DNA of 64,000 nucleotides, taken from the NCBI GenBank assembly GCA_001179505.1, contig CDMY01000520.1:124001-188000 (forward strand). Direction: 5' to 3'. The first letter of the stretch is position 1, and each line of letters begins with the position of its first letter. A model generated the notes under the pieces. It did no database searches, was not told the DNA's origin, and saw nothing but the letters and a program-made list of their open reading frames with translations. This document shows positions 24,901-46,956 of the stretch, one piece after another. Made by a program: the position numbers and the translations under genes. Origin of the DNA: Vitrella brassicaformis CCMP3155. Lineage: Eukaryota; Protista; Chromerida.

Positions 24901-27828
24901 AGTCAGCCACCGAGACAGCCCGATCCGCTGTGATTGATTCATGTCGCTTCCCTCCTCGCGTTGTGTTGGTTGATTCACAGGTTGACCGTCGCCACACTCT
25001 GCTGTAGGCGGGCTGTCAACTAGTCACTCCATGCATATTCGTGTGCTGTCCTTTGTCAGGGGGTCTGTGGCGGATCCTGCCGCTCCATTGCAAGGCCTCC
25101 AACCTCTCCCAGCTGTGCTGCCCAGGCACAAACAAGCCCGACACAGACGACGACGATGATGCAGACTCGCCACATCAACAGGGGCAGCAACAGCACCAAA
25201 CCCAGCGCGCCTTCTCAGAGTCAGGCAGTGCCTCCCGGTCTGCTATGCGACAGTCGCACTCCGACAACGTCAGCGAGAGGCGGCGGAAACGGAAGGACAG
25301 GTGGCTGCAGTACTTCATTTGTCCCCAACTATGGGTGGTGTGCCTCACATTCATCCACCCAAGTGAGCCAGGCACACAATCAAACAGACCAGACAGATGA
25401 AGAGGTCGCGTGCTCTTTTTGTGTCCTTGCCTGTCGTCCTTAGCCGTGACGCGTCAGCTGCTGGAGATCCTCCCCTGCCGCACCTTCCCGACCATCCGCT
25501 TGTCAGAGCCCCCCGGCGAACCCCTCGAGGGGCCTTATCCAACCATCCGCCGCTCATTGCTCGACCCCTCAATCCTCTGCTACACCGGCCAGCACCTCAC
25601 CTTCACCATCGTCTCCGTCGTGGGGCTGTGCGTGTGGTCCTTCGGCCCGGTCATCGCGGCACTGAGCATTCTGTGCTCGTACCAGCGGTCGGGGCGGCTC
25701 TACAAGCGGCAGACGCGGAAGAACCTGGGATTTCTCTACAACGGCTACCGTCGGTCCTTCTTCTACTGGGATGTCTGTTTTGCTTTGCGGCGGATTGCGG
25801 CTCTTGTCATAGCGCAGGCGGGTGCGTCTTTGGGTGACGAGATGATCCAGCTGGTGTGTTGGCAGCTCGTGGCTGCCTCGTCGCTCATCGTGCAGCTGTG
25901 GGTGAGGCCATTCGACAGCAGATCCTTCAACATACTCAATCGCATGGAGGCACAAGGTATGTAGGCGGCCGGGCCACACTGCCTGCATGGTCGGGTGCGT
26001 CAATGTGTTGGTCTGTCGATCGATTGAACTCAGGTTTGCTGATTTGGAACATCTCACTGTGGTGTCTGATGCTGCTGGCGTCGACAGCCGCCCATCCGAC
26101 TATGATGGCGTTGACAGCCGCCCACCCGACTGTGAGCCAGGAGTTTCAGGAGGTGCTGGGATACGTGCTGACGACCGTTGTGGTGCTGATCAACGCCTAT
26201 CACATCATCGCCCTCATTTGTCACACTGTACAGCATTCGCTCGATGTGCTGATGACGTCCATCCTGATTCTCGAGCACCTACCGGACAGTGCTCCCGGTG
26301 CCCGAGAGAAGAGGGACGGCATCATCATGGCGGCTATGCGTCGCATCGCCTTCACTGTGGGGGATTGTGAGGACCGCCGACGAGCAAGAGTCCCAACAGT
26401 GTGGCTCGACGCCGACGGCAGTGAGCTTACCATCATCCTTGACAGCAGCAAGGGCAAGGGCGGCGGCAAGGGGACGGCAGCCACGCCATCAGGCTCATCT
26501 GGCTCACGTCGACCAAGCAAGCCGCCACGCAGCCGCGCCCCTGTCGAGGGCAAGGTGGTGCTGCATGCGTCATCGCTGCCCCTCCCCGTGCCTATGACGA
26601 CGCAGAGCGCACCGCCTGCGCTGCTGGAGGTAGCACCTGGGGCTCATGACGGCAGCTTACGCAAGAAGAACACGGCCACCAGTTTGGACGACCTGTACTT
26701 CGACTCTTCTGCCACCGTGCAAGTGCAGCAGCTGCCCGTCTTTGCCCCCTGCCTCTTCCCGCCCTGCTCCGCCGACCACACGGCCGCAGCGACCACCCGG
26801 TCCCTCCCCCCTTCCGTCGAGGGCGACACTGGCACGTCACTCGGCCCCCATCTCCCCATAGCCGGGCAGCATCTCGGGTCGAGAGGCGACCTACCTGCTG
26901 CCATCTGGTCCGCGGCGACCGACAGCCTGCCACCAGACCAGGCACAGCGGATTCCCCAGGTGATCGCATCCACCCACTCGCTGCCCGCCATGGAGCACAG
27001 CCAGCGCACCACAGTGACCGATGCTGCCGAGCCGTCCTCGGTGGCACCGACCGAGCCGTCAGTCCGTTCTGCCAATCCGCTGAAGGAGGTGTGGAATCGC
27101 ATGTCAACAGCGGCGCTGACTCTAACTACACGGACAATGCGTGCGCGTCGTGTGGAGAGCGACCGGCGGAAGCGGTGGTGTTCTGAGGTCATGCGGCTGA
27201 CGAGTGAGTCGATGCAGGAGGTCATCGAGCAAGTGGGCATCCAGGCGGTGCCGAGTGATTTCGTCGAGTTCTTGTGGAGCCAGACCTTTGATGTGTACCG
27301 TCGGAGGAAGAGGACCATCAAGGATCCGACGTCAGGCAACGAACGGATCGTCCTCTTGCCGTCCTTGGAACTGAGGGTATGCACATGCACATACATATAC
27401 ATAAATGTACACATGGCGTCTCCGCATTTCGGTCATTTCTGTTGTGTTGCGCACATGTGCGCAGGTGGCCACAAGGTCGTCGTTGCGGAGGGGGTCTTCG
27501 TCATCCTTTGTGGACCTGATGAATGCGATTCAGGAAGAGGCCGTCACCGACGACACCGCAAAGACCGAAGGCATACCATTCACCGACTTCCAGGTAACCA
27601 AACAAGCACCAGCGACATCGTATCAGTCTCGCATCTCCTCTCTCTCTCCCTGTTCTCCCTGTCGCTCTGTGTCTGGCCATGTGGTACGTGCAGAGTAGCA
27701 TGGCGTTCGTTGTGGATCGGCTGATCAATGCTGGCCCCGGCTGGAAGGACGTGTATGCCGCCTTCAAGACGGCAAGGCAAGCGGACAAGGGTCACCAGGC
27801 GAACAACGGCCGTGTGTCGCCCCGATGA
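18949..27828 (+). CDS. Large receptor-like protein: signal peptide, unknown N-terminal domain, LRRs, EGF/TNFR(ephrin-receptor)-like Cys repeats, multi-pass (about 7 TM) region, cytoplasmic tail
   Basis: Signal-like RFSISLFMGVLPVVAAVSG. LRRs such as LSGPLPDAIVSLPELRGLYLDDTQLNGTLP and LQRLWDLDLSRNRLSGVIP. Cys-rich CRCIPGYEGHGRTCTKCPDGTYSN and EGHTGPMCGSCDKGW. TM block with CYTGQH..VGLCVWSFG..LGFLYNGYRRSFFYWD..LWVRPF. Last exon ends ...NGRVSPR* at 27828. Individual exon borders are approximate. Confidence 0.85.
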
Positions 27829-28625: not shown

Positions 28626-29171
28626 CACACAATCATTCACGCAGCAGCGTCCAGCGTCACGTACGAGACAACTGACAACTGACGAATCACGCGAGCCCTC
28701 CCATTCCGCGCACGTGTACCATACATCACATCACATCACAGACGTCATGACACATCCCTACACACGCAGCGTCAGTCACACAGTCACGCACGAATGCATT
28801 TGTATGCGCACGGCGAGCCGACCAGCCAGTCACTCTCATTTGGAGGGGACCGACTTGCCAGCCCCCCCAACACACACAAAAGATCACATGCACGCCTCTC
28901 TGTACGAATTGTTGCCATTTGCGGCCACACACACACATTCATGTATGAATCATGAAAGGCACCCTTGGCTGGCTAAGAGGGCCACATCGAGAAAGTGACT
29001 TAGCTGTAGAAGCTGACCACAACAGGAGACACTGACATCAGCACTGTCACGAGTAATCGTACACGTGCTCGGGAAATCACATCACACGGATTGTGGGCTC
29101 GTCCAAGTTTAAAAGCAAACTGCAGGCAACAACAGATACACACAGGCAGAAAACAGGTTGAGAACAGATAA

Positions 29172-30332
29172 TTAAGACAATGTTCGGCGTGTTAGTGAAG
29201 AATCTGTCTGTTGGAGAGCGCGTGCGTCCATGCATATCACACCTGCTCTGTAGGCGCATCCGTTGGCGGCAAACGGACCCCTGTGAGCGCATGTGTTGCT
29301 ACTACGTCTCCTGCACATACAAACACGAATCGTGCGAACGGCCAGGTCTCTTCAAGTTCACTTGACTAACCATGTCTCGGGAGTGTTGTTGTTGTGGCAC
29401 GAGACCTCCATCCACAAGCATCCTCTCCACCCGTACTTCTTGCACGCCTCATTTCCCGATTTATGCAAACGCGTCGGCCCAGACGGACCAGGCTTCAGGT
29501 CCGTCATGCACACATACTTGTGGAGGTTGAAAGGGGTGGACGGGGTCTTCCTCTTCATGCAGCCATACAGCTTCCGGTTGCACTTCCTGTTCCTTCTATC
29601 GCAACGTTGGTCGTCGCAACTGCATGGAAAGACCAAGAGCAGAAGAGAGTTCAACAAAGGAGATTGGCCTGCAGCATGCTGTCCTCTCATGTCTACTCAC
29701 TCGTTGGAGCAGCAATCGTTGTCGTATCTGCAGCGGTGTCCATATGGGGCCAGCGCTTTCTTCGGCCAGCACCAACCATTGACGCAGTTCTTAGAGTTGC
29801 AATCCCGGGTGCGACTGCATCTACTCCCAATTGGCCTCTGCTGCTCCGAAACAGCAGTTGTGTTGCCCTGAGGGCAAGCACACAAGGAACAGGGTCGACA
29901 ATAATTACCGAGACTCAACGCACTCGCATCTCATGTGTAGGTTTGTGTGAGAGCTCGGGTGCGCGTACATGGGAGGAAGCCTGCTCCTCCTCCATGCCGT
30001 CCTCATCAGCCTCGTCTCTGTAGGGACTGTCGGGATGCTCAGGATTCATCCAGTCCTCCCACACCTGCACCCAAACAGAAGAACAGCCATCTATGTGCAT
30101 GAGACTCAACACCCTGCGTCAGCAAGCTCCACTAGCCTACATCGTCGCCGTCTGCATCGTCGTCTTGTTCCGTGAAGCCGCCGAGGTCCTCCTCGAGCTC
30201 AACTGTACGAGGTGCGTCTCCAAGTTGAAACTCGGGAGACTCCGGGTCTGCGGCAGGCACGGGCGGGTCGGCATAAGGAGCGGCCAGACCCATCGTTACC
30301 AGGGCAGCGAACACGACAAGCAGACGAGTCAT
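29172..30332 (-). CDS. Secreted Cys-rich protein: signal peptide, acidic pro-region, two knottin/Dickkopf-like Cys motifs, C-terminal SRCR-like segment
   Basis: MTRLLVVFAALVTMGLAAP; acidic EEDLGGFTEQDDDADGDD and RDEADEDGMEEE; GSRCSRTRDCNSKNCVNGWC; GHRCRYDNDCCSNDCDDQRC; YVC...NEACKKYGWRGCLWMEVSC...TCAHRGPFAANGCAYRAGVIC. The last exon (29172-29310) is inferred; an unspliced alternative stops at 29358. Confidence 0.75.
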
Positions 30333-30391
30333 GATGCACACACAGCACACAGATCTGCGGCGGAGGGGGGAAGAGGAGGAGAGGGGGAGAA

Positions 30392-31078: not shown

Positions 31079-31830
31079 TTTTTGCAATCCTCTCGACTGG
31101 CAAGCACTGAGTCTGTCCGCATACATGGGGTCCATGTGGGCGGGCAAGTCGTGTGGGCGTACTGTGGCTTACTTGCGCTACGTGTGCTGCCTTGGTTGTC
31201 TGTGCATTGTGTCACTTTACTGTGGCTGACCCATCCACTCACTCGTAGAACGGTGATTTTTGGCTGGACAGACGGCCGTCCACATTATTTGTTGGCGCTG
31301 GCGGGCGAGAGCTTGCCGACACTGCGGCGCAGCCTCATGGATGTGTGACATGCGTGCCGGCTCGTCTTGATTGTCACACGTGTGGCCATCGTGGCAGCGT
31401 AGCTGTAATGGAGACGAGAGGCGGGCAGCTTGGAGTTCTTTTTTGTCTGGACAGGTTCGTCCACACCGTTGGGTGCTGCTCTGGTGTCTGCGTGTTGGGT
31501 GCCGTGTGTGTGTCTGTTGACTGGCTGGTCAGTCAGTGGCACCTCCGAAACAGGGAGGTGCTGACGTACCTGCGCAGATCGGCAGACACACACAGTGCCA
31601 CGCGCCTGAGGCATTGGATGGATGAATGATGTGTGAGGGAGATGCGACGTCACGATGGGACATTGCATTGCATTGCGGGTTGGGAAAGAGACACGTGGGG
31701 ATGTGGGGATGAGAGCACTGAAACCATCAGAAGAAACCAGCAATCATCGGCAAAGGCACTCTCGCCCTCCCCTCTGATGAACAATCCATCACACGCTGAA
31801 TGCAGACAGACTGCCCACCAGGAATACCGT
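31062..31830 (+). repeat. Copy of the S74-gene 3' flank; inverted relative to 34540-35310, direct relative to 38208-38750
   Basis: Long near-identical stretches such as atgcgatggttgtgtgatttttgcaatc...gggcaagtcgtgtgggcgtactgtggcttacttgcgctacgtgtgctgccttggttgtc. Confidence 0.9.
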
Positions 31831-32793: not shown

Positions 32794-34291
32794 TCAGCAC
32801 AATTTAATGGCCGACACCCAGCCGTTAAAAGGGTCGAACCTGGTAGCCACTGACTGGTTTACATTGCTCTTATGACCTGTAGGCGAGAGAGAGAGAGACA
32901 GACGGATCCATGAACGCACACAGAAAGAAGGAACGAAGAGAGAGACAGACACAGAGGTGCAATCAAACTGAGGCTCGTGTGTGTACGTATGGCTCGTTCC
33001 GTAGCTAACAGATGGACGGGCGCACCTTGCAAGTAGCAGGTGGTGCCGCCGTTTTTGTAGGTGTAGAAGCGGCACTTCTTCTTGTCGCGACACTTCTGCC
33101 TGCACTCCGCCTCAGTGTTGTATTGCTTGGTATCAATGACCGCGCCAAAAATATAGGTGTTGTTTTTGCGGAGAAACGGGCACTTTCTCCGGTTCACATC
33201 GCCCTCCGGATCAACACTCAGCTCACCAGCTGCATGCAGACCCAAGACAGAAATTATGTAGGTGCACACTCCCAATCTGTACATACAGTGGCCTTACGAA
33301 TGCTTGACTTAGCGGCCGTGATGATATCCATGAAGAAGGCGCACTCCTCGCGTGCCTGCTCAGCCGCGGGGCTGCGGAGGGAGCCTTCATCTGCACCACA
33401 CACACGAGCGATGAGAACCAGGAACATCGTCACGTGTATGCACGCTGGCCGGGATGCCCCACCTACCAGTCTTGAGGTCCCTGCAGGTCGTGATTCTCTG
33501 CTGGGCAGCTGAAGCCTCCTCAGGGTGTTTTTCGGCCCAAGAATGGTCACAGGCGGACCATTTGCATTCGTTTTTCCAGCAGTTCCAATCGAACAGAGGG
33601 CACTCCCAGCAGCACTTCTCATCTGGCTTCTCTGCAGCAGCCAGAAAGGAACACACAAGACACAAGACAGACATTCGAGCTAGCGAATGACCTTGTGTGC
33701 ATTGCTGCACCACCCACCAGTCGTGGTGGGCGGCTCCTCGGCTGGTTCCTCGTCGGCGTCGTCCTGTCTGGTGCTCTCGTCATCGGTGCACGCGGAGAAC
33801 GAACACTCATACTTCCAGCACTGTCATCAGTGTCATCAGCAGCCACACAAGACACACACCGTCTCCTCATTGCATGGTCGCACCCACCCCACCCACCTGC
33901 CAATCGAAGAGCCTGCAGTCCCAGCAGCACTTATCCTTGGGTGGTTTCGCTGCAGCACAACAGCATAAGAAACGACCGACCAGGACAGCACACACGCACA
34001 CACACACACACACACACCAGACAAACAGGCGGTGACAAGTCAGGTCTGGCTGCAGATGGTCCTACGAGTGGTGGTTTCGGTCGTGTCACCGTCTCCATTG
34101 TCACCGTCTCCATTGTCACCGTCTCCATTGTCACCGTCAGTGCCGTCAGTGCCGTCAGTGCCGTCAGTGCCGTCGCCTGGCTCGGGGTCGCCATTCTGGA
34201 GCCGACGTGCAGGCACGCCGGCACGAGGCACTTCCTGTGCCGCCGCCAAGGCGAGCAGGCCGATAAGGGCAAGGGCGAAGAGGGTCCTCAT
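32794..34291 (-). CDS. Secreted protein with GTD/GDN repeats, two Cys/Trp-rich repeats and a C-terminal PAN/apple domain
   Basis: MRTLFALALIGLLALAAAQE signal; KCCWDCRLFDWQCWKYECSFSAC and KCCWECPLFDWNCWKNECKWSAC; PAN-like CPFLRKNNTYIFGAVI...EAECRQKCRDKKKCRFYTYKNGGTTCYLQ...WVSAIKLC*. Seven exons with GT-AG borders keep the frame. Confidence 0.85.
34085..34174 (-). repeat. Coding minisatellites: (GACGGCACT)x4 = (DGT)4 and (GACAATGGAGACGGT)x3 = (DNGDG)3
   Basis: Direct reading within exon 1 of the PAN gene. Confidence 0.9.
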
Positions 34292-34447: not shown

Positions 34448-35380
34448 ATTTCCGTGACCTCTCCCTTTATTTCTACACGCACGCGTGACTCGTCCAGCCA
34501 TGTGTATGTCATCCGAGCCGACGGGATATTCACGCAGGCAATGGACGGGTATTCGTGGTGGGCAGTCTGTCATACATTCAGTGTGTGATGGATTGTTCAT
34601 CGGAGGGGAGGACATTGTTGCTTCCTTCTGATGGTTTCAGTGCTCTCATCCCCATGTGTCTGTGCGTCCCGCCCCGGCAATGCAATGGCCCACTGTGTCA
34701 CACGTCGCATCTCCCTCACGCGCATCATCCATCCATCCAATGCATCAGGCACGTGGCACTGTGTGTGTCTGCCGATCTGCGCAGGTACCTCAGCACCTCC
34801 CTGTTTCGGAGGACCGCTGACTGACCAGCCAGTCAACACACACACACACACACACACACGGCACCCAACACGCAGACACCAGGGTGGCACCCAACAGTGT
34901 GGACAGACATCTGTCCAGACCAAAAAGAACTCCAAGCAGCGCGCCTTTCGTCTCCATTACAGCTACGCTCCCACGATGGCTACACGTGAAAATAACAACA
35001 TGAGCCGGCACGCACGTCACACATCCATTAGGCTGCGCCGCAGTGTCGGCAAGCTCTCGCCCGCCAGCGCCAACAAATAATGTGGACGGCCATCTGTCCA
35101 GCCAAAAATCACAGTTGCACAAACAAAGTGGATGGGTCAGACACAGTAAAGTGACACAGTGCACGACAGACAACCAAGGCAGCACACGTAGCGCAAGTAA
35201 GCCACAGTACGCCCACACGACTTGCCCGCCCACATCGAGCCCATGTATGGGACAGGTTCAGTGCTTGCCAGTCGAGATGACTGCAAAAATCACACAACCA
35301 TCGCATCCCGCATGCACACATTGATGGACCACATACACCCCACCCATCACACACCATGGATGGAGGCATCCACCGACTAC

Positions 35381-36613
35381 TTAGCGGAGGGCTCGCTGGC
35401 CCTTCAGGGCAGCGATCTCGGCTTCCAGCGCTTCCACTTTCGCCTGCAGCTGCTGGGCGACTATCATTGTCTGCCACACACAAGCGAACACACAACACAC
35501 AGCAAAGGAGGGACACGGATACACACATACATGTGAAGCCTCGATTGACACGTGTGTGCTATTCACCTTGTAGAGGAGAGCGTATTGGTTCACATGGATG
35601 CTCTCTTCGGGCTCCGGGGTGCCCACGAGGTGTGCTCGATCAGTCATCACCGTGTCAGGGAAGATCGCCTGTGTGGATGGGACGCCAAAAAGACAGACGC
35701 ATCAACGGACAGAGCCGAGTGAAGAGGAACGGTGGTCTCGGGCTGCTCCATCGCACCCACCTTAAGCTCCTCGCCAATCACGCCCGTGAGTGGGGTCTCC
35801 GCCTCCGCCTGAAGCCCACGTCCGACCTCCTTACGCTGTCAGAGCGACAACACACAAAGGGAGAAGTCATTCCACCCACCCACCCACACCCTCCATCGGT
35901 ATCGTGGCGTGGGTGCCTCCCTACCTTGTATGTGTGCATCTTGATGAACCTGAACCGCTCGTAGGTGTTGCCTCGCTCCTGCTCGGGCATGATGTCCACT
36001 TGGGACAGACTGCTGCGGGTAACCATGCCGTCCCGGTCGAAGACTCTGTCGGTGAAGACTCTCCCCACCATCATGCCCGTTCCGCAGCCAACCGACCCTG
36101 CACCGACAGACAGACAGACAGACAGACACACAGACATTAGAGCTCATGGTGTCGAGCTCATATCCGCCTGCATCCACTACGGCGTGCAAAGACCTACCGT
36201 ATTGATGCATAGGCCTTCCGTTGGTCTCATCTGCCGCCACAAGCCCTGGATCAGGTTTGCCTCGAGCGGTAAGCTGGCACTGTAAGCCAAACATGCACAC
36301 AAACATACAGACAATCAGACAGACACGTGGTCGAATGCCCATCCCCATCCTATCTATGTACCTCGTCAAGCGCAATTTCCTGAACAAGACACCGCAAGCC
36401 ACGTCAATATGTCAGGATGGGCGTATTGGTTGTTTGGCCGCCTGCCCTTACCGTCGGCTTGGCGTCCCTTAGGAGCGGTTCATCGATTTGATCGGGTGGC
36501 CTGCAGGCCATCCACATCTTCCCCCCGCCGGCCGCCGGCGGTGGATACGCTGATGCTGGCGTTGCTGTCACTGCTGCCAGAGCAACAAGGAAGACGTTGA
36601 GGAGGCAAGCCAT
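35381..36613 (-). CDS. Secreted protein with C-terminal ICA/Peptidase S74-like chaperone domain and coiled coil (paralogue a, 227 aa)
   Basis: Exons 36613-36452, 36279-36198, 36097-35925, 35835-35761, 35668-35567, 35470-35381 total 684 nt, in frame. MACLLNVFLVALAAVTATPASA signal; VTRSSLSQVDIMPEQERGNTYERFRFIKMHTYKRK...TGVIGEELKAIFPDTV...SIHVNQYALLYKTMIVAQQLQAKVEALEAEIAALKGQRALR*. The gene model is firm; the domain call rests on motif recall. Confidence 0.85.
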
Positions 36614-36879
36614 GATACACACACGGAGATCTGAGACGCGCGTCCAGGTAGGCGCGGTTCACGCCAGGCCGAGGGAGGGGGAAAAGAGGAGGGGGACCGG
36701 GGCGGCTATCGGCGAGTGGGGATCGCGTTTCTGTTGCGGCTTAGCTCGCATCGGTACTTTTCAGTTACGGATCCCCCGACCGGTAACGGCTACGGAGAAG
36801 GGAGAAGATCCGGTGATCCCAGCCCTGTCGCCTCCTCTTCACCCTTCCGAACCGCAGGTCTGTGTGCTGTGTGTGCATC

Positions 36880-38129
36880 ATGACTCGTCTGCTCGTCGTG
36901 TTCGCTGCCCTGGCAGCAGCAATGCCAGCATCAGCGAAGATGTGGATGGCCTGCAATCCAATGAATCAAATTGATGAACCGCTCCTGAGGGACTCTACGC
37001 CGACGGTAAGGGTCAGGCAGGCGGCCAAACAACCAATACGCCCAACCAACCCAGGACGTGGTTTGCGGTGTCTTGTTCAGGAAATGTTGCTTCACGCGGT
37101 AGCTGGGATGCGGATGGCCATTTGGACCACGTGTCTGTCTGATTTGTGTCTGTGTATCTTTCCCTTGCAGTGTGACCTTAGTGGTACGGGAAGAGGCGAA
37201 CCTGAACCAGTGTTGGTGGCTGCAAATGAGGACACCGGAGAGGTTGAGAATGGATCCGGTAGGTCTCTGCACGCCGTAGTGGATACAGGCGGATATGAGC
37301 TGACACCACGAGCTCTAATGTCTTTTTGTCTGGCTGTCTTCTGTGTCTGTGTGTCGGTGCAGGGGCGATGGGCTGCGGACAGAATAACATGCTGGCCAGC
37401 GTCGCGGCCGAGGAGATCCTCGACGGGACCGGCAGGGTCACCCGCAGCAGTCTGGCCCAAGTGGACATTATGCCCGAGCAGGAGCTGAGCAACACCTATG
37501 AGCGCTTCAGGTTCATCAAGATGCACACATACAAGGTAGGGAGGTACCGACGGCATGCATAGCGAGCAGGCCAAGGCAGCGATGGAGGGGGTGGGTGGGA
37601 TGGAATGATCTCCCTCGGTGTGTGCTGTCACACTGACAGCGTAAGGTGGCCGGACGTGGGCTTCAAGGGGGGGCGGAGACCCCAATCACGGGCGTCATTG
37701 GCGAGGAGCTTAAGGTGGGTGCGATGGAGCAGCCCGAGACCACCGTTCCTCTTCACTCGGCTCTGTCCGTTGATGTGTCTGATGTGTCTGTCTTTTGGGC
37801 GTCCCATCCACACAGGCGATCTTCCCTGACACGGTGATAACTAATCGAGCACACCTCGTGGGCACCCCAGAGCCCGAGGAGAGCATCCATGTGAACCAAT
37901 ACGCTCTCCTCTACAAGGTGGATAGCACACACGCGTCAATCAAGGCTTCACATGTAATGTGTGTATCCGCGTCCCTCCTTTGCTGTGTGTTGTGTGTTCG
38001 CTTGTGTGTACGTGGCAGACAATGATAGTCGCCCAGCAGCTGCAGACGCGCAGCGACAACCAGGCCAAGGCCATCGAAGCGCTGGAAGCCGAGATCGCGG
38101 CCCTCAAGGCTCAGCGCGCCCTTCGCTAA
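36880..38129 (+). CDS. Secreted protein with C-terminal ICA/Peptidase S74-like chaperone domain and coiled coil (paralogue b, 224 aa)
   Basis: Exons 36880-37005, 37171-37258, 37363-37535, 37640-37714, 37816-37917, 38019-38129 total 675 nt, in frame. MTRLLVVFAALAAAMPASA signal; VTRSSLAQVDIMPEQELSNTYERFRFIKMHTYKRK...TGVIGEELKAIFPDTV...HVNQYALLYKTMIVAQQL...IEALEAEIAALKAQRALR*. Confidence 0.85.
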
Positions 38130-38893
38130 GTAGTCGGTAGATCCATCCATCCATCCATGGTGTGTGATGGGTGGGGTGTATGTGGTCCATCAATGTGTGC
38201 ATGCGGGATGCGATGGTTGTGTGATTTTTGCAATCATCTCGACTGGCAAGCACTGAGTCTGCCCCATACATGGGGTCGATATGGGCGGGCAAGTCGTGTG
38301 GGCGTACTGTGGCTTACTTGCGCTACGTGTGCTGCCTTGGTTGTCTGTGCATTGTGTCACTTTACTGTGGCTGACTCATCCACTTTATTTGTGCAACTGT
38401 GATTTTTGGCTGGACAGATGGCCGTCCACACCGTTGGGTGCCGTGTGTGTGTGTGTGTGTTGACTGGCTGGTCAGTCAGCGGTCCTCCGAAACAGGGAGG
38501 TGCTGAGGTACCTGCGCAGATCGGCAGACACACACAGTGCCACGTGCCTGATGCATTGGATGGATGGATGATGTGTGTGAGGGAGATGCGACGTGTGACA
38601 CAGTGGGCCATTGCATTGCCGGGGCGGGACGCACAGACACATGGGGATGAGAGCACTGAAACCATCAGAAGGAAGCAACAATGTCCTCCCCTCCGATGAA
38701 CAATCCATCACACACTGAATGTTGACAGACTGCCCACCACGAATACCCGTCCATTGCCTGCGTGTAGGACACTGATCCCGTCGAACGCCGTTGAAAATCT
38801 GCATGCAGACGGGGGCGCCCCCATGAATTGGGGTGATCTCTTCGTTCCTTTCCCCGTTCCTCGCTTAACCCATGGCTCAGTGAGGCGACAAGC

Positions 38894-40308
38894 ATGGGCA
38901 TCATCCTTGCCATCCTGGACGAGGTGGGTGCGGGCTCAATATGTCATCCAATGACACGACCAAACGTACCACCACACCTGTCTGCCTTACGTTATGATAT
39001 GTGCAGGTCCGTCAGGACCGGAGGGAGTCAAAAAGGTCATTCATTACCAGCGCACGGCCAGACGAAGCCACCAAGTGAGACAAGCGAGTCAGAGAATGAC
39101 AGACACGCACCAGACACCGCTGAATGGCCTGGTGTGTTGCTTTTCCATGCACAAAGGACGCTGGAGTTTATGCGCATCAGTGTGACACCTGACATCAGCC
39201 ACACACTCCACCGCTCGTGGATACCGGGTGAATGAGGAGGGCTCTACACACATATGTGTGTGATTGTCCGACATGCATGCAGGTCGCTCCCGCGGGGAGC
39301 CAATACATGTGGCCGCATATCATGCGAACCGGAAGCCCATAAATCGGTGGAGACTGTGGTATGTGGAGGCGATGTGGAAGGCACCGGACGATCCGTACTG
39401 AGGTGTCTTCCTTTCTTTTCTGCAGGTACACCATCAAGTACTCGGGGAGAGACATCAACGAAAGGCATGCAGCGCATGCGCGTTGAATGGAGGGAGGGAA
39501 GACGGTATTTCCATCTGTGTCTCACGCGGCAGGGACGTTGATGGCATGACACCTTTGTATTTGGCGACGATGAATGGACAGCTGCCGGGCGTCCGCATAT
39601 TGCTGTCTGCCGGGGCCATAGTCAACCAAAGAACAGATCACGGGTGGACGCCTCTCGCGTGTGCCGCATTCCAGGTGCCAGAATAGGCATACACACATAC
39701 GTATACAGAAGTTTATATGTACAGGGTTACCTGTACATATTGAGGTATCTGCTGAGTGAGGGCAGCGACCCCAATGCATGCCACCCAGAGGAGAAAATCA
39801 CCCCATTGATGCTCATTGCTGCATCGTACTGACACGCACAGGATGCATGCACGTATCGCTGACACGTGTACCGATCCTTTCATGTGTGCCATCCCTTGTG
39901 TCATGTGTGTCTATGCAGGCCGCGCATATATAACACCTTTCTGGTGGAACAGAGGCACCGAAGGGAACGCCGTAGAATACTCCAGGCATGTGCTTGTGTG
40001 CAAGTGTCCGTGTATTGTGCGTATACCCACCTGTCCATTTGTGTGTGTGCATGGCAGCAACAATTCCACGAGCAGCAACAACTTCTCCAAGAGATGCAGC
40101 AGTTCGTGTCTCAGCAACGAGGCGTGAGGGAGACACGTGCACCGATGACAACACTGTATGTATGTATGTATGTATGTATGTGCCTATCTACACAACAGGT
40201 CAGCCGTCCGTCAAGCCAGCAGCCCTCACAGTCGCCTTCCCGCTCGCCATCACGTACGCACAGAAAGAAAGAAAGAAAGAAAGACAGGCCGACGGACTAC
40301 ATACCACA

Positions 40309-40340
<32 letters not shown>

Positions 40341-43300
40341 AAAGCACCTACGTGTGTCTGTGTGCAGGCCGTTTCTCCCTGAAGCCTCCGTCCGAGAAGC
40401 TCTGGACAGCGAAGTCCCTCATGGATCGCGCCATGAGCTTAATCATGAAGATGAAGAGTGGCATCAGTTAGTGACAAAAATTGGAAACTGACGTATGCGT
40501 GCGTGGCTGTCACTCTGTGTCACCAGTCTCGCCTCCGATGTCTCCCCAATCGCTCAAGTCGCCCACACGGGGAGGTGAGGTCGGTCCGCCAAAATAAACA
40601 GGAGGCACCTCCTTTAGTTGCGGGTGTGCAGGCGTCTTTTTCCGCCTGTCGACTGTGAAAACGCCAAGCGAGGCCGGCACTGTGCAGTCGAGTGAGTTTG
40701 TTCTGACTAGGAATCAAAGACAAAGGTGTACGTCCACGAACGGATGGATGTCTTTAGGGGTGGGAAGCATCACGTCTCCGTCGTCGGTGCGCATGTCTAA
40801 GCGTCAGCTGCAACTCAAGGGACAGTTCAAGAAGGCCCCGCTGCATATCAGGTATGTGGCCTGGGGACATGAGTGTAACATGTCCTTTATGTATGGATGG
40901 TGGGCTTGTGTGTGTCAGGGAGCGTTATGGACAGGAGGGTGAGGCCAAGTGGATGGAGGCAGCACACGCGTGGAGACTCAACAAGGGTAAACATGTCATC
41001 ACATTCACGCATCGATGGATGAAGGGTGGAAGACAGGTGCATTGATGTGATTAAACCGATCAGGCAGCTGGTCGATTGTGATGCTGGACGCCTTCTTCGA
41101 GTCCTGTAGGGGGATGACAGACTCACGGGTACAAACGGCACCACGCCACAGCAGTGAGGAAGAAACTGCATGGACCTTCACGCAGGCTGAAACTCGCCGC
41201 GGGTCCATCACTGTCCGTGTCTCGGAGGCAATCGCCAGCGTTTCGAAGGTGCAGACCAGCCAACTTCCACATCCGGCCGTGAATGAATGCACGCGGCATG
41301 GCATGGCCTGACATGTTTGCAGCGCTTCTTCATGCGGCCGTCGAAGCGACCTGCCATCGCTATCAACCTGGAGCAAAAGGACAAATACGGGAGAACTGCC
41401 CTCATGTACGCAGGTGGGTATGGAAAGGTGTGTATACACACATATGGATGCATACGAATGTGCATTCACAGCCACGTACGGCCACGAGGAGACCGTGTCT
41501 CGCCTCATTTACGAAGGGGCTGACCCACTCGCAACTACCAACAAAGGTCCTTTCATTGATGCAGAAACATACGGGTAGACCCGTGAGTGAATAGATGTGT
41601 GTGCAGGCGAGTCTGCGCTTCACCTGGCTGTGCGTTTCAACCACCTGGACACGTGTGAGCTGCTTCTCAAGGCGGGTGTCGACGCGAACATCACTGACAG
41701 CCTCCTGCAGGCAAACTGGCACGAGACAAACATCCACATATGAATGCAGACATGCCTGGAACGGTGTGTGTGCGTGTTACAGACGCCTTTGCACCTGGCC
41801 ATCCAGTGCAACCACCACTTTGTGGCTGAGCTGCTGCTGTCCTTCCGTGCCCGAGTGGAGTTGTCGGACGCCAACGGCAAGAGCCCACTCTACCTGTGTC
41901 TTGACAAGCTCCCGCACACCAGCAAGTACATATCGTCACACACATTCACGCCATGCTAATCTGCTAATGTGTATGTATGGCACACACAGTCTGTTTTCCT
42001 TGTGCGTCAAGCACGCGGCCAACATATGCCAGGTGAGAGAGAAAGAGACAGTCTCATTCGTCATTGCATGGGATGTGTGTACACAGGTGGACCCGCGTGG
42101 CTGGAACCTGCTCATCTACGCTATCGAGAACAACGTGGTGCGCACAAACGCATCGAGACATCCACTTTGTCCCAATGTCTCTCTGCTTCCCTCGTGTCTG
42201 TGCAGGGCGATTACATTCTTCCGATCGTGGAGCGCATGGCTGAGGTGGAAAAGGCGGACATGATCAACTTCAGGGTAGACTCAATGGCTTTTGTCCGCAT
42301 GCGCATACGCACGTATCTGTGTCTGTCTGCCATCAGGATCCGCTGCAGCGCACGCCGCTGCACCACGCGTGTGCCAAGGGAGACGTGGCAAGCGTCAAGA
42401 AACTCATCGACTTGGAGGCCGATGTCTTCGCAAAAGTAAGTACCCACAGAATGTACACGCACGCCAAGGTGCGTGACCTTGGTACATTGTGCGCGCTCCG
42501 TTGTTCCATCAGGACCATCTTGGCTACACAGCTCTTCACCTGTCGTGCGAAGAGGGCAATTTGTCGGTGGTACACATCATGATCGACTCCACACCCGAGT
42601 GAGTGAGAAACCGAGACACACACATGCACATCGTATATGTATCCGCAGCATTGACGAGCCGAATAAATTCGGCGAGACCCCGATACACTTGGCAGCACAC
42701 AACGGACACATTGTACGTCCGCGTACGAATACGTACGGGCACTCACACACGTGTCACTGTGTGCACAGGCGGCGATGCTCGCACTTCTCGACCCGGAGTT
42801 GGCCATCGTGCCCGCTGACACAACCATTGTACACAACAACACACAGAAATGCACCTTCACACGCACTCGCGCATCGATGTGTGTGAATGTGTGTCCAGAC
42901 AGACGCATCCGGCCGGACGCTGCTGATGAAGGCATGTATGTCGGGCCACATCGACCTGGTCCACCTGCTCCTCAAGACCAGACAAGCCGACAGATCGCCG
43001 GCAGACATGGCCGCGTTCGACATACCGCCACAGAGCGTGAGTATACGCCTACAACCAGGAAGGCATGGACGGACGAATTAAAGGGCAAATTCATGCTCGA
43101 CTGTGTGTCTCGTATGCAGGTGAATGCTGTGGACAACCACGGCTTCACCGCTCTGATGCTGGCGTGCCGTGAAGGCCACTGGCAGATCATACCAGCACTC
43201 GTACTGGAGGCCGCCAGCGTCTCTGGTCAACAAATCAACCCAACGGAGGGAAGGGTATGCATCGCCTGTATGTCTCTCTGAATATGAACAGCCAAGGACC

Positions 43301-46300
43301 GCGACGGGTGGACTGCATTGCACTGGGCGGCACACGAGGGGGAGGCACGTGTCGTCGCGTCACTAATCGAGGTGAGGAAACTGGCATATGCAGTCTTGTG
43401 CATATGCATGATGTGACGGGTCCGTCAGGTGGGAGCAGGAGTTGACACACAGGAGAATGCAGGATGGACCCCGCTGATGCTGGCATCGGCATCCGGCCAC
43501 GAGGAGGCGTCCAGCGTGCTCATCGACCACGGTGCATCAATACGTAGAGAGAAGAAAGATCTCATGCACATCTCCATCTGTGTGGTGCAGGTGCTGATCC
43601 GTACAGGCGCAACATGAACGACGACACGGCTTACACCATCACCAGGAGGAACGGACACACCGCCATCGTCCAGGTACCTACAAACTTGGCTGGCTGCCCC
43701 TCTGCTTGCCTGCCTGCATCTCCGTGCCAACACGACGCACAGGAGCTGGTCGATGCCATGCGCGTCCGCCCCGAGCGCTTGGTCGCCGCAAAGGACCAAG
43801 AAAGACCCGAAGAAGAGGTGAGCCGCCCCATGAGACGAGACACTCAGCCACGAGCATGTGTGCCTTTTTTTGTGTGTGCGGATAGGAGGAGGAGGAGCCC
43901 CTTGAGGATGAGGGAGAGGCTCTGCCCGAGGCGTTCCGGCTGTGGAAGGACATCGACAAACGGAAGAGACGGACAGGTAGAATCGTCAAGACAGAGGTCA
44001 GTGAGCTGCTCAGCGGGCAGAAGGGAGGCAGGCAGGGAAAGAGACATGCACACATTTTCGTCATCCCGTATGCTTCTGTCCACCATGCAGGGCGTGCTGT
44101 ACGTCAGTCTGTTGTCGGCGCAGAATCTCTATCTCGAGGGCATCGGCAAAGTGAGTGATCCGATGGCAACCATGTGTGCGCACCCATCCACGTGTGATTG
44201 TGTGTCAGCTTCATCCATACGCCTTCACATCCTTTTCCAACCAGCACAATGCCCCCAATGTCGGCTTCTTCTCGCCCGCATGCCCCAGCACATCAACACC
44301 GGTACACAGCTACACATGCGGATTCTTGTCCGCTCAGTAACATCAACACCGGCCATGAAGGTGCACACACACACACTGACTATGTGTTTCCGTCCGCGCA
44401 GGTGTACTTCCACACGATGCGGTTCGCCTTCACCGATCTGGACGAGGACGCCTGTCTGGCCATACAGCTCCTCTCGGCACCCTTCCCCGCTGAACCAGAG
44501 GTACAAGCACCCACACAAATTCTTCCTTGACAACACCAACGACATTGCATGTCATCAGGGAAAGCACGCGGATGCTGCTTACGCCAAGCCAATCACCTCC
44601 AGGACGGATCTCGCGCGCAAGTCGGACCAGTCCTCCCGTGCAACGTCCAAGGCGGAGAGTCTCATGCAGGCGGACGACGATCTCGTCAACCCCTTCCAGC
44701 GCCAGGTTGACGGCAAGAAGAACGCCGTCAACCTGGCGGGCGAGTGGAGCGGCGCGTCGGTCAGGAGGACAGAAACATTCGAGGGAACCAAGGCCAGGCA
44801 ACGAGTCCGCGTGGAGATTCCACAGGTGCCCACGCAGACACACAAAGCTTCCATGCACGGCAACACGCAGTCCATCCTTACAGTCAGCGTTGCTGCCCCG
44901 CGGCCCGGCAGTCGAGGTGATCGCTCGGGGAGACGCGGCCACCCAAAAGAAGGGCAGAGACGCAAAATCCAAGGCCGGCATCCAGACGCGAGACAGCTTT
45001 CGCAGCGAGGTAGGCAGCAAGCAGCCGTGAATGTCTATCTTGTGTACATGCCATTTGGCTGGCAGGGATATGATGAGGACCAGGAGGGAGGCGAAGGCGA
45101 GGGCGATGCTGACGACAAGCGAGCATCGATATGGAGCTTGGGGGAGCTCGCCATGCGGTCAGCACATGAACGTGTCCACAATACGATGAAGTGTGTCTCT
45201 GCCTGTGTGCCTGCCTGCCTGCCTGGCTCAGTGCGCTGCGCCAGAAGGAGGAGGACCAGAAGGCCAAGGAGACTGCGGAGGAGGCTGAAGAGGCAAAAGA
45301 CCCCAGGGAGTGGGTGAGCAGGAATCTCAACACCGCCAGACGCAGACACATACGGAGGGATGGCAACAAATGGGATGTCTTGCTCGGCAGGACTTGAGCA
45401 AGGTGCGGACGAAAATCGACCCGAAAGAGTTCAGGCGACTCGAGAGGTCGGTGCCCAAGAGACACGTCAGACCGATGGGTCTGACAGCCATTCCTTCCGT
45501 CTCTCACTCAGGTGGAAGGATTACAACAACCGGCTGTCCTCTACCATGGCCCGCGGCGTCCCGCCGCCTCCCGTGCCCTACACACACCTGCCCATCGGCT
45601 TTGCCGTCGTGCGCCTGGACGTGCTGAAGCAGTGTGTGGAGAGCCAGCGCGCCATCAGGCTGGACAAGCACCTCAAGGGAACACCGAGGGGATCCGTCAG
45701 ATTCGAAATGCACTTTCGCCCGAGGCTGGTGCGTTATCCGCGTCCGACTGAGGCGCTTCAGCTTGATAAGGAGGCGCTGATCGAGGGCAGGGAGGCGGCT
45801 GTCCCATCATCCCAGGACATGAGTGTCGTCCATTCCATCATGCGAGTCAACACTCCTAGGTACTGACTGACTCAGAGTGGCGGAAATGCGTATGTATATG
45901 TCAATATTTGTACGTCGCCAGAGCTCATGAGTTGGCCAACGAGGTGACGAGCGAGGCGTATCTGCCTGAGGTCTTCGACTGGAGAGAGGAGAGGGTGGTC
46001 TACAAGGAAACGGCCAAGCGACGGTGATGCGAAATGGCAGCACATTCGTCGAGAGACATGTACATTGACAACACGGATGGGTTGGATGCTTACTTTGTTA
46101 GAGCTGATGTCGAGCCCCCCCTTGAGGCCACTTCGCTGCCATCCCCGAGCGAGGCCTCTCTTGCTCCGTCAGCGATGCCGTCAGCCCGATCAAAGGTCCG
46201 GGGCCCACCGTGCCAAGCCGATGCACCATACGATGAACTGATGAATGGATGGACCTGGGTCTGTGTCTTCCGCCTGCAACGATCTAATGGTCGGTCATCA

Positions 46301-46956
46301 GACCCCGACTGCCTACACGGAGACAGCCGCAGCAGCACCCTCGGAGAAGGGGTCGCTCTCGCTCAAATCTGCCATGAGGATCAAGACTCCCGCGATAAGA
46401 AGGAGACAGGCGGGTATGTATTTGCTTCATGCACACGCCCGTACATACATGCACACGTGATGTTTGCTGTTGTCCTGTCAGCCGCGCCAAAGCGCAAGAT
46501 GAGATCCCTCAAGTGGGTCGATGGGACTCGAGGGGAGCAGCTGACGTCGAGGAGCGTCATCGAACGGGCGAGGGAATGGAAGGATGAGGAACAAGAGACG
46601 CGGGAAGGTTGGCAGAGACGCATACACGGGTGTCGGCAGGGAATGTGGCTGTCTCGTGTCAGCAACAGCCATGCCGCCGTCGCCGAAGCCCTCTGAAACG
46701 GCAGCCGTCCTGCGTCACGCTCTGGCAACGACGGACACAAGGAAGAAGGAGGGAGTGTTGGTTGGCAAAGAGCTAGACCTCTTTCTAAGGTGCGTGTGCA
46801 TCATCCGTAGATGCATATCTGGACGTACAAGGAGACTTGGATTGCAGGTCAAAAGACCGGCCCAAGTCCACGATTATGAAGAGGAAAGAGGTTACGGTGC
46901 GCGTCTCGATGGAGGCGGATGGAGACAGGAGGCAAGAGGGAGAGCGGAATGTGTAA
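38894..46956 (+). CDS. Large multi-exon ankyrin-repeat protein with a C-terminal split C2-like domain
   Basis: Many ankyrin motifs: DINERDVDGMTPLYLATMNG, DHGWTPLACAAFQG, KDKYGRTALMYA, TPLHLAIQCNH, QRTPLHHACAKGD, NKFGETPIHLAAHNGH, DNHGFTALMLACREGH, ENAGWTPLMLASASGH. C2-like GVLYVSLLSAQNL and IGFAVVRLDVL...GTPRGSVRFEMHF. Start, stop and single-gene status are approximate. Confidence 0.75.

What the first reader, a model, noticed from the sequence alone, without database searches (positions are those of the whole stretch)
35381..38129. Standalone secreted MYRF/tail-spike-type intramolecular chaperone (ICA/S74) proteins lacking the catalytic lysine
Seen: two spliced paralogues (227 and 224 aa) made of a signal peptide, a variable N-terminal segment of about 75 aa with three conserved Cys, then SSL(A/S)QVDIMPEQE..NTYERFRFIKMHTYKRK...TGVIGEELKAIFPDTV...SIHVNQYALLYKTMIVAQQL and a heptad coiled coil. 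Known: ICA/Peptidase S74 domains of phage endosialidases, tail fibres and animal MYRF follow the pattern SDxRxK...L..I....YxYK...GVIAQEV..I.PEAV...VN...AVKEL plus a coiled coil. They trimerise the upstream region and autocleave through a Ser-Lys dyad. Inference: the motifs align almost without gaps, but SDxRxK reads SSLAQV/SSLSQV, so Ser is kept while Asp, Arg and Lys are lost. These would be non-cleaving, secreted trimerisation/beta-helix folding modules with no NDT80 DNA-binding domain and no large spike. I know of no such family described in alveolates. They could be trimeric surface or wall fibres, or chaperones acting in trans for the neighbouring secreted payloads.
Basis: partly seen in the sequence, partly recalled or inferred. 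Interest (0 to 1): 0.9.

Follow-up and report, generated by a model that had tools for sequence, protein, structure and literature searches.

The report
Secreted dead phage-chaperone proteins in Vitrella
Two head-to-head genes of the coral-associated alga Vitrella encode small secreted proteins whose tail is a phage tail-fibre/MYRF-type "intramolecular chaperone" domain that has lost its self-cutting lysine, while their short head evolves unusually fast; this suggests, without testing it, a permanent three-chain scaffold that displays a changeable binding tip.

Summary
Confirmed, with corrections. The window is Vitrella brassicaformis CCMP3155 (contig CDMY01000520.1). Genes A (-) and B (+) sit head to head, 266 bp apart. 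Model B equals an MMETSP transcript exactly. RNA contigs show all B introns and A introns 1-4.

The C-terminal ~110 aa is a true ICA/Peptidase_S74 homologue:
- PHROG tail-fibre profile, E=4e-8.
- My own viral S74 profile, p=1e-7 to 1e-9.
- Family profile against the MYRF ICA crystal chain, E=3e-6.
- A Vitrella bridge protein with a bona fide PF13884 domain and SDGRYK motif.
- ICA structures are the only strong fold matches.

Pfam itself stays below threshold.

The SDxxxK head of the domain cannot be aligned. No lysine lies within 60 residues upstream of the core, so the canonical Ser-Lys dyad is absent. Whether Ser is "kept" depends on the alignment.

New here: head exons diverge faster than their own introns (31.6% vs 11.7%; dN/dS 1.5; 17:0 nonsynonymous:synonymous between B and B'), while the core is under purifying selection.

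UniProt already auto-names gene B's product "Peptidase S74 domain-containing"; I found no paper on it. The short family was found only in Vitrella. Earlier notes of this scan report other S74-type genes elsewhere in this genome.

Best reading: a non-cleaving trimer scaffold carrying a fast-evolving secreted head. This function is inferred, not shown.

The parts
36880..38129 (+). Gene B, 7 exons: 36880-37005, 37081-37098, 37171-37258, 37363-37535, 37640-37714, 37816-37917, 38019-38129. 230 aa. NCBI model CEM20043.1 (208 aa) starts at M23 and lacks the signal peptide.
   Evidence: Translation is identical to MMETSP transcript P0001. All six introns are seen as joints in RNA contigs.
35381..36613 (-). 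Gene A, 7 exons: 36452-36613, 36362-36379, 36198-36279, 35925-36097, 35761-35835, 35567-35668, 35381-35470. 233 aa.
   Evidence: All introns are GT-AG. The first 147 aa equal transcript P0002. Introns 1-4 are seen as joints in RNA contigs. Introns 5-6 are inferred from 96-98% identity to gene B.
36614..36879 (.). 266-bp spacer between the two start codons. It is probably a shared bidirectional promoter and carries both 5' UTRs.
   Evidence: RNA contigs of A reach 36726 and those of B begin at or before 36766-36864. The promoter function is inferred.
36880..36936 (+). Signal-peptide-like leader of B (aa 1-19, MTRLLVVFAALAAAMPASA, A-x-A site). The equivalent in A is 36548-36613.
   Evidence: Read from the sequence. 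No predictor was available.
37081..37433 (+). Fast-evolving head of B (aa 43-101, introns included; C49 and the GCG motif with C82). The equivalent in A is 36027-36379 (-).
   Evidence: dN/dS is 1.53 for A-B. Head exons are 31.6% divergent against 11.7% for introns 1-3, Fisher p=4e-7.
37434..37484 (+). Nearly invariant linker RVTRSSLAQVDIMPEQE (aa 102-118). This is where SDxxxK would sit; it has no Lys. The equivalent in A is 35976-36026 (-).
   Evidence: No profile aligns it. It is nearly invariant among A, B and B'. Four aligners give four different placements.
37485..38024 (+). ICA/S74-like core of B (aa 119-196, introns included). The equivalent in A is 35465-35975 (-).
   Evidence: phrog_1980 E=4.1e-8. 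Viral S74 profile 18.7-24.8 bits. MYRF ICA 7dc3 E=3.4e-6. Foldseek top hits are ICA structures. dN/dS is 0.28-0.57.
38025..38126 (+). C-terminal heptad coiled coil of B (aa 197-230). The equivalent in A is 35384-35464 (-), one heptad shorter.
   Evidence: Part of one long helix (residues 188-229), pLDDT 96-98. Exon 7 is 90, 111 or 132 nt in the paralogues, i.e. it changes in 21-nt (one-heptad) steps.

Best explanation
A and B are expressed, divergently transcribed paralogues of a Vitrella-specific family of small secretory-pathway proteins.

Each protein has a cleavable signal peptide, a short conserved N-terminal stretch and a ~60-aa Cys-containing head under diversifying selection. A nearly invariant linker follows, then a C-terminal ICA (Peptidase_S74-type) domain ending in a coiled coil.

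The ICA domain is homologous to those of phage tail fibres, endosialidases and MYRF, but it has lost the SDxxxK Ser-Lys dyad. I therefore infer that it no longer cuts itself off. Instead it would stay attached as a permanent trimerisation clamp (beta 'donut' plus triple coiled coil) that presents three copies of the fast-evolving head. The head would most plausibly be a binding or recognition tip, comparable to the receptor-binding tip that sits just upstream of the ICA domain in phage fibres.

Shown: the gene structures, their expression, the homology, the absence of Lys and the selection pattern.

Inferred: secretion, trimerisation, non-cleavage and a binding role.
For: Genes and transcripts.

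Homology:
- An exhaustive profile search of 1.84e9 proteins finds P0006 (CEM12505.1) at E=1.2e-4 over 146 residues.
- P0006 carries PF13884 at 41.6 bits (cut-off 22) with the motif SDGRYK, and aligns from its Ser to phi29 gp12.
- The family+P0006 profile hits the MYRF ICA chain 7dc3_A at E=3.4e-6 and 3gud at 0.009.
- P0001 alone hits the PHROG tail-fibre family phrog_1980 at E=4.1e-8, residues 120-227 against the last 105 profile positions.
- A profile I built from 71 IMG/VR S74 domains scores A at 24.8 bits and B at 18.7 bits (p=1e-9 and 1e-7), covering profile positions 12-96 of 97.
- 93 of the 100 nearest ESM-Atlas clusters carry PF13884.
- The AF2 model has pLDDT 76-98 over residues 115-230. 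It matches only ICA structures: MYRF 7dc3 at E=1.7e-5 and TM 0.63, then 3gw6, 3gud and 4uw8.

Dyad loss:
- There is no Lys within 60 residues upstream of the core.
- About 108 of 110 sampled viral domains keep S-D-x-x-x-K.
- K592A or S587A abolishes MYRF cleavage, and the C-terminal triple coiled coil drives MYRF trimerisation (PMC8326128).

Selection:
- dN/dS is 1.5 in the head and 0.3 in the core.
- B against B' shows 17 nonsynonymous and 0 synonymous changes in codons 1-104, against 11:14 in the rest (p=1.2e-4).
- Head exons are more divergent than their introns.
- Coiled-coil indels come in whole heptads.
Against: - Pfam PF13884 itself is below its gathering score for all family members (12.3-15.8 bits against 22).
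- The good AF2 model used an alignment that I filled with viral S74 domains, so the fold match is partly circular. With family sequences only, the model failed (pLDDT 36.6).
- No multimer prediction could be run, so trimerisation is unshown.
- The linker where the motif should be is the most conserved part of the protein. That could mean a retained, non-canonical cleavage site rather than a purely structural 'cable'.
- Secretion is read from the sequence only. A plastid or other organellar route is not excluded; in A the residue after the predicted cleavage site is Tyr, and I recall (untested here) that an aromatic residue there marks plastid import in some algae with complex plastids.
- The head has no recognisable fold (pLDDT below 60).
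Confidence: 0.55

Rival explanations
1. The domain still self-cleaves, using Ser106 (or Thr/Ser nearby) with a different general base such as H132, K130, K135 or K137 from the core. This would release an ~85-aa trimer-matured head and a free ICA fragment, as in P0006, phage fibres and MYRF.
For: The linker RVTRSSL(A/S)QVDIMPEQE is nearly invariant among A, B and B' although it adjoins a hypervariable head. The ungapped extension of the MYRF alignment puts S106 on S587 and Y134 on Y615 (PMC8326128). In MYRF, K671 from another helix lies near the reaction centre (PMC8326128).
Against: K592A alone abolishes MYRF cleavage (PMC8326128). Ser and Lys are reported as absolutely conserved in ICA alignments (PMC3742443), and they are kept in about 108 of 110 viral domains sampled here. 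No profile aligns the linker to the motif.
Confidence: 0.17
2. They are chaperones acting in trans: the dead ICA domain co-assembles with, or folds, other secreted Vitrella proteins such as the neighbours or the self-cleaving S74 proteins like P0006.
For: Several other S74-type secreted genes exist in the genome (P0006; earlier scan notes). The pre-ICA GCG region is shared with P0006.
Against: All characterised ICA domains act in cis on their own chain (PMC8326128, PMC3742443). The neighbours (a PAN-like gene and a Cys-rich gene) show no fibre or beta-helix that would need such help. A fast-evolving head is not expected of a chaperone.
Confidence: 0.06
3. They are decaying remnants of a viral (polinton-like or giant-virus) fibre gene with no present function.
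For: PF13884 fibre genes are reported as ubiquitous in polinton-like viruses inserted in protist genomes (PMC12220804). One of the four family members (A' in L002) carries a frameshift. The catalytic motif is lost.
Against: Both genes have seven spliced exons, a signal peptide and good RNA support. The core has dN/dS around 0.3. Heptad-preserving indels point to constraint. The genes called within about 10 kb on either side (LRR, Ank, CPW_WPC) carry no viral hallmark families.
Confidence: 0.05
4. The resemblance to S74/ICA is chance and the domain is an unrelated helix-strand module with a coiled coil.
For: Pfam is below threshold. The family-only AF2 model failed. Coiled coils inflate scores.
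Against: Four independent profile sources agree on the same residues: PHROG, my own viral profile, the PDB MYRF chain, and P0006 as a bridge. The match includes the non-helical core (HTYKRK, GVIGEELK..FPDTV, VN..LL). Language-model neighbours are 93% S74.
Confidence: 0.03

Closest known systems
MYRF ICA domain (mouse MyRF, PDB 7dc3)
   Same: It is the best solved-structure match by sequence (E=3.4e-6 with the family profile) and by fold (TM 0.63). It has the same order of elements: helix, strand HxYxxK, GVI(A/G)xE(V/L)K helix, (L/F)P(E/D)xV, strands, VN..., then a long C-terminal helix that forms the trimer coiled coil. Both are eukaryotic, intron-containing genes.
   Different: MYRF has an NDT80 DNA-binding domain, a beta-helix stalk, a membrane anchor and an intact S587/K592 dyad that releases a transcription factor. 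A and B are ~230-aa signal-peptide proteins with none of these parts and no Lys at or near the motif.
C-terminal intramolecular chaperone domains of phage endosialidases, tail spikes and tail fibres (endoNF 3gw6, phi29 gp12 3gud, T5 pb1 4uw8; Pfam PF13884, MEROPS S74; PHROG 1980)
   Same: A C-terminal domain of about 100-130 aa with the same fold and core motifs. It lies directly after the part of the protein that varies most; in phages that part is the receptor-binding tip.
   Different: Phage domains follow large trimeric fibres or beta-helices and cut themselves off through SDxxxK, which is kept in about 108 of 110 sampled domains. Here the upstream part is only ~80 aa and the motif is gone.
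Vitrella CEM12505.1 (P0006, 431 aa, 'Peptidase S74 domain-containing protein')
   Same: It is the closest relative outside the family (E=1.2e-4 in 1.84e9 proteins). It comes from the same organism, has a signal peptide, shares the pre-ICA GCG segment and has the ICA core plus a helical tail.
   Different: It keeps SDGRYK and passes Pfam (41.6 bits). It has a ~230-aa Pro/Thr-rich, mucin-like stalk. Its intron positions differ. It presumably still self-cleaves.
Fibre proteins of polinton-like viruses and giant viruses of protists with a C-terminal Peptidase_S74 domain (PMC12220804)
   Same: They are S74 domains in a eukaryotic setting and a possible source of the Vitrella genes.
   Different: They are large modular virion proteins (up to 3.9k aa) inside viral elements. 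A and B are small, spliced and flanked by ordinary host genes. No viral relative was found by pattern scans.

Membership tests
Peptidase_S74 / ICA domain (Pfam PF13884, MEROPS S74) | Score at or above Pfam's gathering threshold (22 bits) | tested here: not met
   P0001 scores 13.8 bits, P0002 12.3 and P0003 15.8. Single exons give nothing.
Peptidase_S74 / ICA domain (Pfam PF13884, MEROPS S74) | Significant sequence similarity to bona fide members by independent profiles | tested here: met
   phrog_1980 E=4.1e-8. My own 71-sequence viral profile gives p=1e-9 for A and 1e-7 for B. MYRF ICA chain E=3.4e-6. Bridge P0006 is at E=1.2e-4 to the family and 1.6e-10 to PF13884.
Peptidase_S74 / ICA domain (Pfam PF13884, MEROPS S74) | ICA fold (helix, two beta-hairpins forming the trimer 'donut', long C-terminal helix) | tested here: met
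   The AF2 model has pLDDT 76-98 over residues 115-230. Foldseek returns only ICA structures below E=0.1, and AFDB and Atlas neighbours are almost all S74. Caveat: the alignment fed to AF2 contained viral S74 domains.
Peptidase_S74 / ICA domain (Pfam PF13884, MEROPS S74) | Catalytic Ser-Lys dyad in the motif S-D-x-x-x-K at the start of the domain | tested here: not met
   There is no Lys in B residues 21-129 or A residues 67-139. Profile positions 1-11 are not aligned. These are therefore at most non-peptidase homologues.
Peptidase_S74 / ICA domain (Pfam PF13884, MEROPS S74) | Autocleavage at the Ser after trimer assembly | not testable with these tools
   This needs tagged expression or mass spectrometry.
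Peptidase_S74 / ICA domain (Pfam PF13884, MEROPS S74) | Homotrimerisation | not testable with these tools
   Only single-chain prediction is offered. The heptad helix and its heptad-step indels are indirect support.
MYRF family of membrane-bound transcription factors | NDT80/PhoG DNA-binding domain and a transmembrane segment flanking the ICA domain | tested here: not met
   Pfam finds no NDT80 or MYRF_ICA family. The protein is 230 aa and its only hydrophobic stretch is the N-terminal signal peptide.
Phage-type tail fibre or tail spike | Long trimeric fibre or beta-helix N-terminal to the ICA domain | tested here: not met
   Only ~80 mature residues precede the linker. No repeats or beta-helix are predicted, and pLDDT is below 60.

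The most novel reading that the evidence does not exclude
A phage or virus-derived fibre module has been domesticated by an alveolate into a family of small secreted trimeric 'tips'. The inactivated ICA domain serves as a permanent trimer clamp. The head is locked in an arms race, for example as a decoy or blocker of viral attachment, or as a cell-cell or gamete, host (coral) or bacterial recognition ligand. This would be a natural example of a self-processing chaperone converted into a structural oligomerisation domain.
Probability: 0.2. Interest if true: 0.75.

Novelty: new variant of a known kind. Interest (0 to 1): 0.5.

Why it matters
ICA domains are known as self-removing folding sensors, and Ser and Lys are described as absolutely conserved (PMC3742443). 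A naturally dyad-less, expressed version under purifying selection, fused to a rapidly diversifying secreted head, would show a second way of using the module: as a permanent trimer scaffold. It would also give a compact natural trimerisation tag. Finally, it points to a lineage-specific secreted family in a chromerid, a photosynthetic relative of the apicomplexan parasites, that may take part in recognition or conflict. The domain assignment itself is not new, because UniProt already carries it automatically.

Tried and rejected
- Pfam on single exons gave no hits.
- AF2 with only the three family sequences was unusable (pLDDT 36.6).
- Word-index homology searches with P0001 and with the family+P0006 alignment found nothing outside Vitrella.
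- Pattern scans of IMG/VR and JGI metagenomes with family alignments found no relatives. The one JGI hit (P0004/L004) is a Vitrella-type transcript fragment.
- tblastn of the window for further copies found only A and B, plus an 11-codon leader copy at 30300-30332. Weak hits at 23.9 kb and 1.5 kb were noise.
- I tried to fix the position of the catalytic motif by alignment. Four methods gave four answers (S106/V111, R102/S107, L108/I113, A93/D98), so I claim only the absence of Lys.
- Intron positions are not shared with P0006, so they give no help on ancestry.
- The thermonuclease hits in PDB (E 0.1-1) are chance.
- The scFv hits of P0006 come from its Gly-rich linker.
Full report
**What is there**

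Reading 35000-38500 and splicing by hand gave two divergently oriented genes with canonical GT-AG introns. A search with the open frame that carries exons 1-2 of gene B returned an MMETSP transcript, P0001 (230 aa). P0001 equals gene B plus six residues (EMLLHA).

- With seven exons, the model of B translates exactly to P0001.
- The equivalent micro-exon of gene A (36362-36379, EIALDE) gives a 233-aa protein. Its first 147 residues equal transcript P0002. The rest of P0002 follows gene B, probably an assembly chimera.
- Contigs of two RNA runs laid on 35300-38200 show all six B introns and A introns 1-4 as joints, with the micro-exon letters between the sides. The two other runs laid (kind not on record; probably genomic) cover the introns without these joints. 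B is 2-5 times deeper than A.
- Cluster look-ups identify the organism as Vitrella brassicaformis CCMP3155, contig CDMY01000520.1.
- The NCBI model of B (CEM20043.1, 208 aa) starts at M23 and so misses the signal peptide. UniProt names it 'Peptidase S74 domain-containing protein'.

**Family size**

An exhaustive profile search of 1.84 billion representatives found only four proteins:
- a paralogue, P0003 (CEL99308.1);
- a 52-aa transcript fragment;
- a mis-modelled neighbour of P0003;
- P0006 (CEM12505.1), at E=1.2e-4.

The second locus (L002, contig CDMY01000277.1) holds another head-to-head pair. B' is intact (240 aa). A' has a 16-nt deletion in exon 3 that shifts the frame. Word-index searches and pattern scans of viral and metagenome collections added nothing. 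On present data the short family is confined to Vitrella.

**Is it an ICA/S74 domain?**

Directly against Pfam the answer is 'not quite'. PF13884 scores 12-16 bits against a cut-off of 22, and only profile positions 11-57 align. Several independent lines nevertheless agree on the same residues (about 119-227 of B):

1. P0006, the only non-family hit, is a signal-peptide protein with a Pro/Thr-rich stalk and a bona fide PF13884 domain (41.6 bits). Its domain begins with SDGRYK and aligns from that Ser to the released chaperone of phi29 gp12.
2. A profile of the family plus P0006 hits the MYRF ICA crystal chain at E=3.4e-6 and gp12 at 0.009. The family alone already gave MYRF as the top hit at E=0.01.
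3. P0001 alone hits the last 105 positions of a PHROG tail-fibre family at E=4.1e-8.
4. I fetched 120 IMG/VR loci with a back-translated GVIAQEV pattern, cut out 71 distinct domains from their Ser to the stop, and built a profile. It scores A at 24.8 bits (p=1e-9) and B and B' at about 18.8 bits (p=1e-7), over profile positions 12-96 of 97.
5. 93 of the 100 nearest ESM-Atlas clusters by language-model features carry PF13884.
6. An AF2 model made with an alignment that includes those viral domains is confident over residues 115-230. Foldseek returns MYRF ICA (TM 0.63), endoNF, gp12 and T5 pb1 and nothing else of note. AFDB and Atlas neighbours are almost all S74.

The last line is partly circular because of the alignment, and the family-only model failed. 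I therefore weigh the sequence evidence more heavily. I regard homology as established (about 0.9-0.95).

**The catalytic motif**

No profile aligns the first ~11 positions of the domain. Four ways of extending the alignment disagree:
It also puts Y134 on Y615.
- MAFFT with P0006: R102/S107.
- Ungapped from the viral profile: L108/I113.
- MAFFT with 66 viral domains: A93/D98.

What does not depend on alignment is that there is no Lys anywhere from residue 21 to 129 of B, or from 67 to 139 of A. Among about 110 viral domains sampled, about 108 keep S-D-x-x-x-K. In MYRF, S587A or K592A abolishes cleavage (PMC8326128). An earlier alignment reported both residues as absolutely conserved (PMC3742443).

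So the canonical dyad is absent. 'Ser retained' remains open. The linker RVTRSSL(A/S)QVDIMPEQE is nearly invariant in the family. This fits a structural role as the 'cable' through the trimer 'donut' described for MYRF, but it leaves room for a non-canonical cleavage (rival, about 0.17).

**Selection**

Comparing A, B and B' part by part gave an unexpected pattern.
- Between A and B the head-coding exons differ at 31.6% of sites, while the introns that separate them differ at 11.7% (Fisher p=4e-7).
- dN/dS is 1.5 in the head, 0.3-0.6 in the core and 0.3 in the coiled coil.
- B and B' differ by 17 nonsynonymous and 0 synonymous changes in codons 1-104, against 11:14 in the rest (p=1.2e-4).
- Exon 7 is 90, 111 or 132 nt long, so the coiled coil changes by whole heptads.

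The tail is therefore constrained and the head diversifies. This resembles the arrangement in phage fibres, where the variable receptor-binding tip sits directly upstream of the chaperone.

**Mechanism proposed**

- Shown: the genes are expressed and spliced, carry an N-terminal signal-peptide-like leader, contain an ICA-homologous domain without the Lys, have a conserved tail and have a fast-evolving head.
- Inferred from MYRF and phage work: the ICA core plus C-terminal helix trimerises. In MYRF the triple coiled coil is the main driving force for trimerisation (PMC8326128).
- Inferred from the lack of the dyad: the domain stays attached, so the mature product would be a small trimer displaying three heads.
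- Speculative: the head binds something under conflict or recognition pressure.

I see nothing in favour of a trans-chaperone role for the neighbours, which are a PAN-like secreted gene at 32794-34291 and a 260-aa gene at 29109-30332 that merely shares B's 5' UTR and first 11 codons.

**Comparison and novelty**

The proteins are non-peptidase homologues of family S74. They are not MYRF (no NDT80 domain, no membrane anchor) and not a fibre or spike (no long upstream trimer). The domain assignment already exists as an automatic UniProt name. S74 fibre genes are reported as common in polinton-like viruses of protists (PMC12220804). AFDB holds other short 'Peptidase S74 domain-containing' proteins of 229-272 aa whose organisms were hidden from me. 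Earlier first-reader notes of this scan mention three more S74-type genes in this genome, one with its Lys replaced; I did not test them. I found no paper on Vitrella or alveolate S74 proteins.

New here are the loss of the dyad in an expressed, constrained gene family, the minimal standalone architecture and the accelerated head. I file it as a new variant of a known kind, interest about 0.5.

Noticed in passing
window 37081-37098 (+) and 36362-36379 (-): 18-nt micro-exons (EMLLHA and EIALDE) flanked by AG/GT. They appear in the MMETSP transcripts and as 'letters between' joints in RNA contigs.
   Followed up: yes
L002 8370-11211 (contig CDMY01000277.1): A second head-to-head A'/B' pair, about 90-93% identical including introns. 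B' is intact (240 aa). A' has a 16-nt deletion in exon 3 that shifts the frame, and NCBI model CEL99309.1 reads through it and ends early.
   Followed up: yes
P0002, P0008 (MMETSP transcripts): Both transcripts are mosaics of different paralogues: A head with B tail, and B head with a B'/A'-type tail identical to fragment P0004. They are most likely assembly chimeras across near-identical exons, but gene conversion or trans events are not excluded.
   Followed up: partly
window 34574-38722: The pair lies in a larger palindrome. The 3' flanks are 96-99% identical (arms 34574-34853/38443-38722 and 35166-35369/38145-38348), far more than the coding heads. Further copies of the 3' flank lie at 31117-31828.
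   Followed up: partly
window 30299-30360 (-): A 62-nt copy (97%) of gene B's 5' UTR plus its first 11 codons (MTRLLVVFAAL) heads an unrelated 260-aa gene (29109-30332) with no Pfam family.
   Followed up: partly
window 32794-34291 (-): The neighbouring 308-aa gene has a signal peptide (MRTLFALALIGLLALAAA), an acidic (D/N)G-rich repeat region (GTDGTD..., GDGDNG...) and a Cys-rich exon that looks PAN/Apple-like. The PAN resemblance is from memory and was not tested.
   Followed up: no
window 38894-46956 (+) and 26946-27828: The flanking host genes are a 1561-aa ankyrin-repeat protein downstream and a 2247-aa LRR/Ephrin_rec_like protein upstream. A similar LRR gene also lies upstream of the second pair in L002.
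   Followed up: no
L003 6001-7446 (contig CDMY01000436.1): P0006/CEM12505.1 is a 431-aa secreted protein with a Pro/Thr-rich mucin-like stalk and an intact, Pfam-passing S74 domain (SDGRYK). It sits beside a GH3 glycosidase gene. Its two introns are not at the positions of the A/B introns.
   Followed up: partly
window 35381-35470, 38019-38129; L002 8370-8501, 11080-11211: The last exon is 90, 111, 132 and 132 nt long, so the coiled coil differs between paralogues by exactly one or two heptads.
   Followed up: yes
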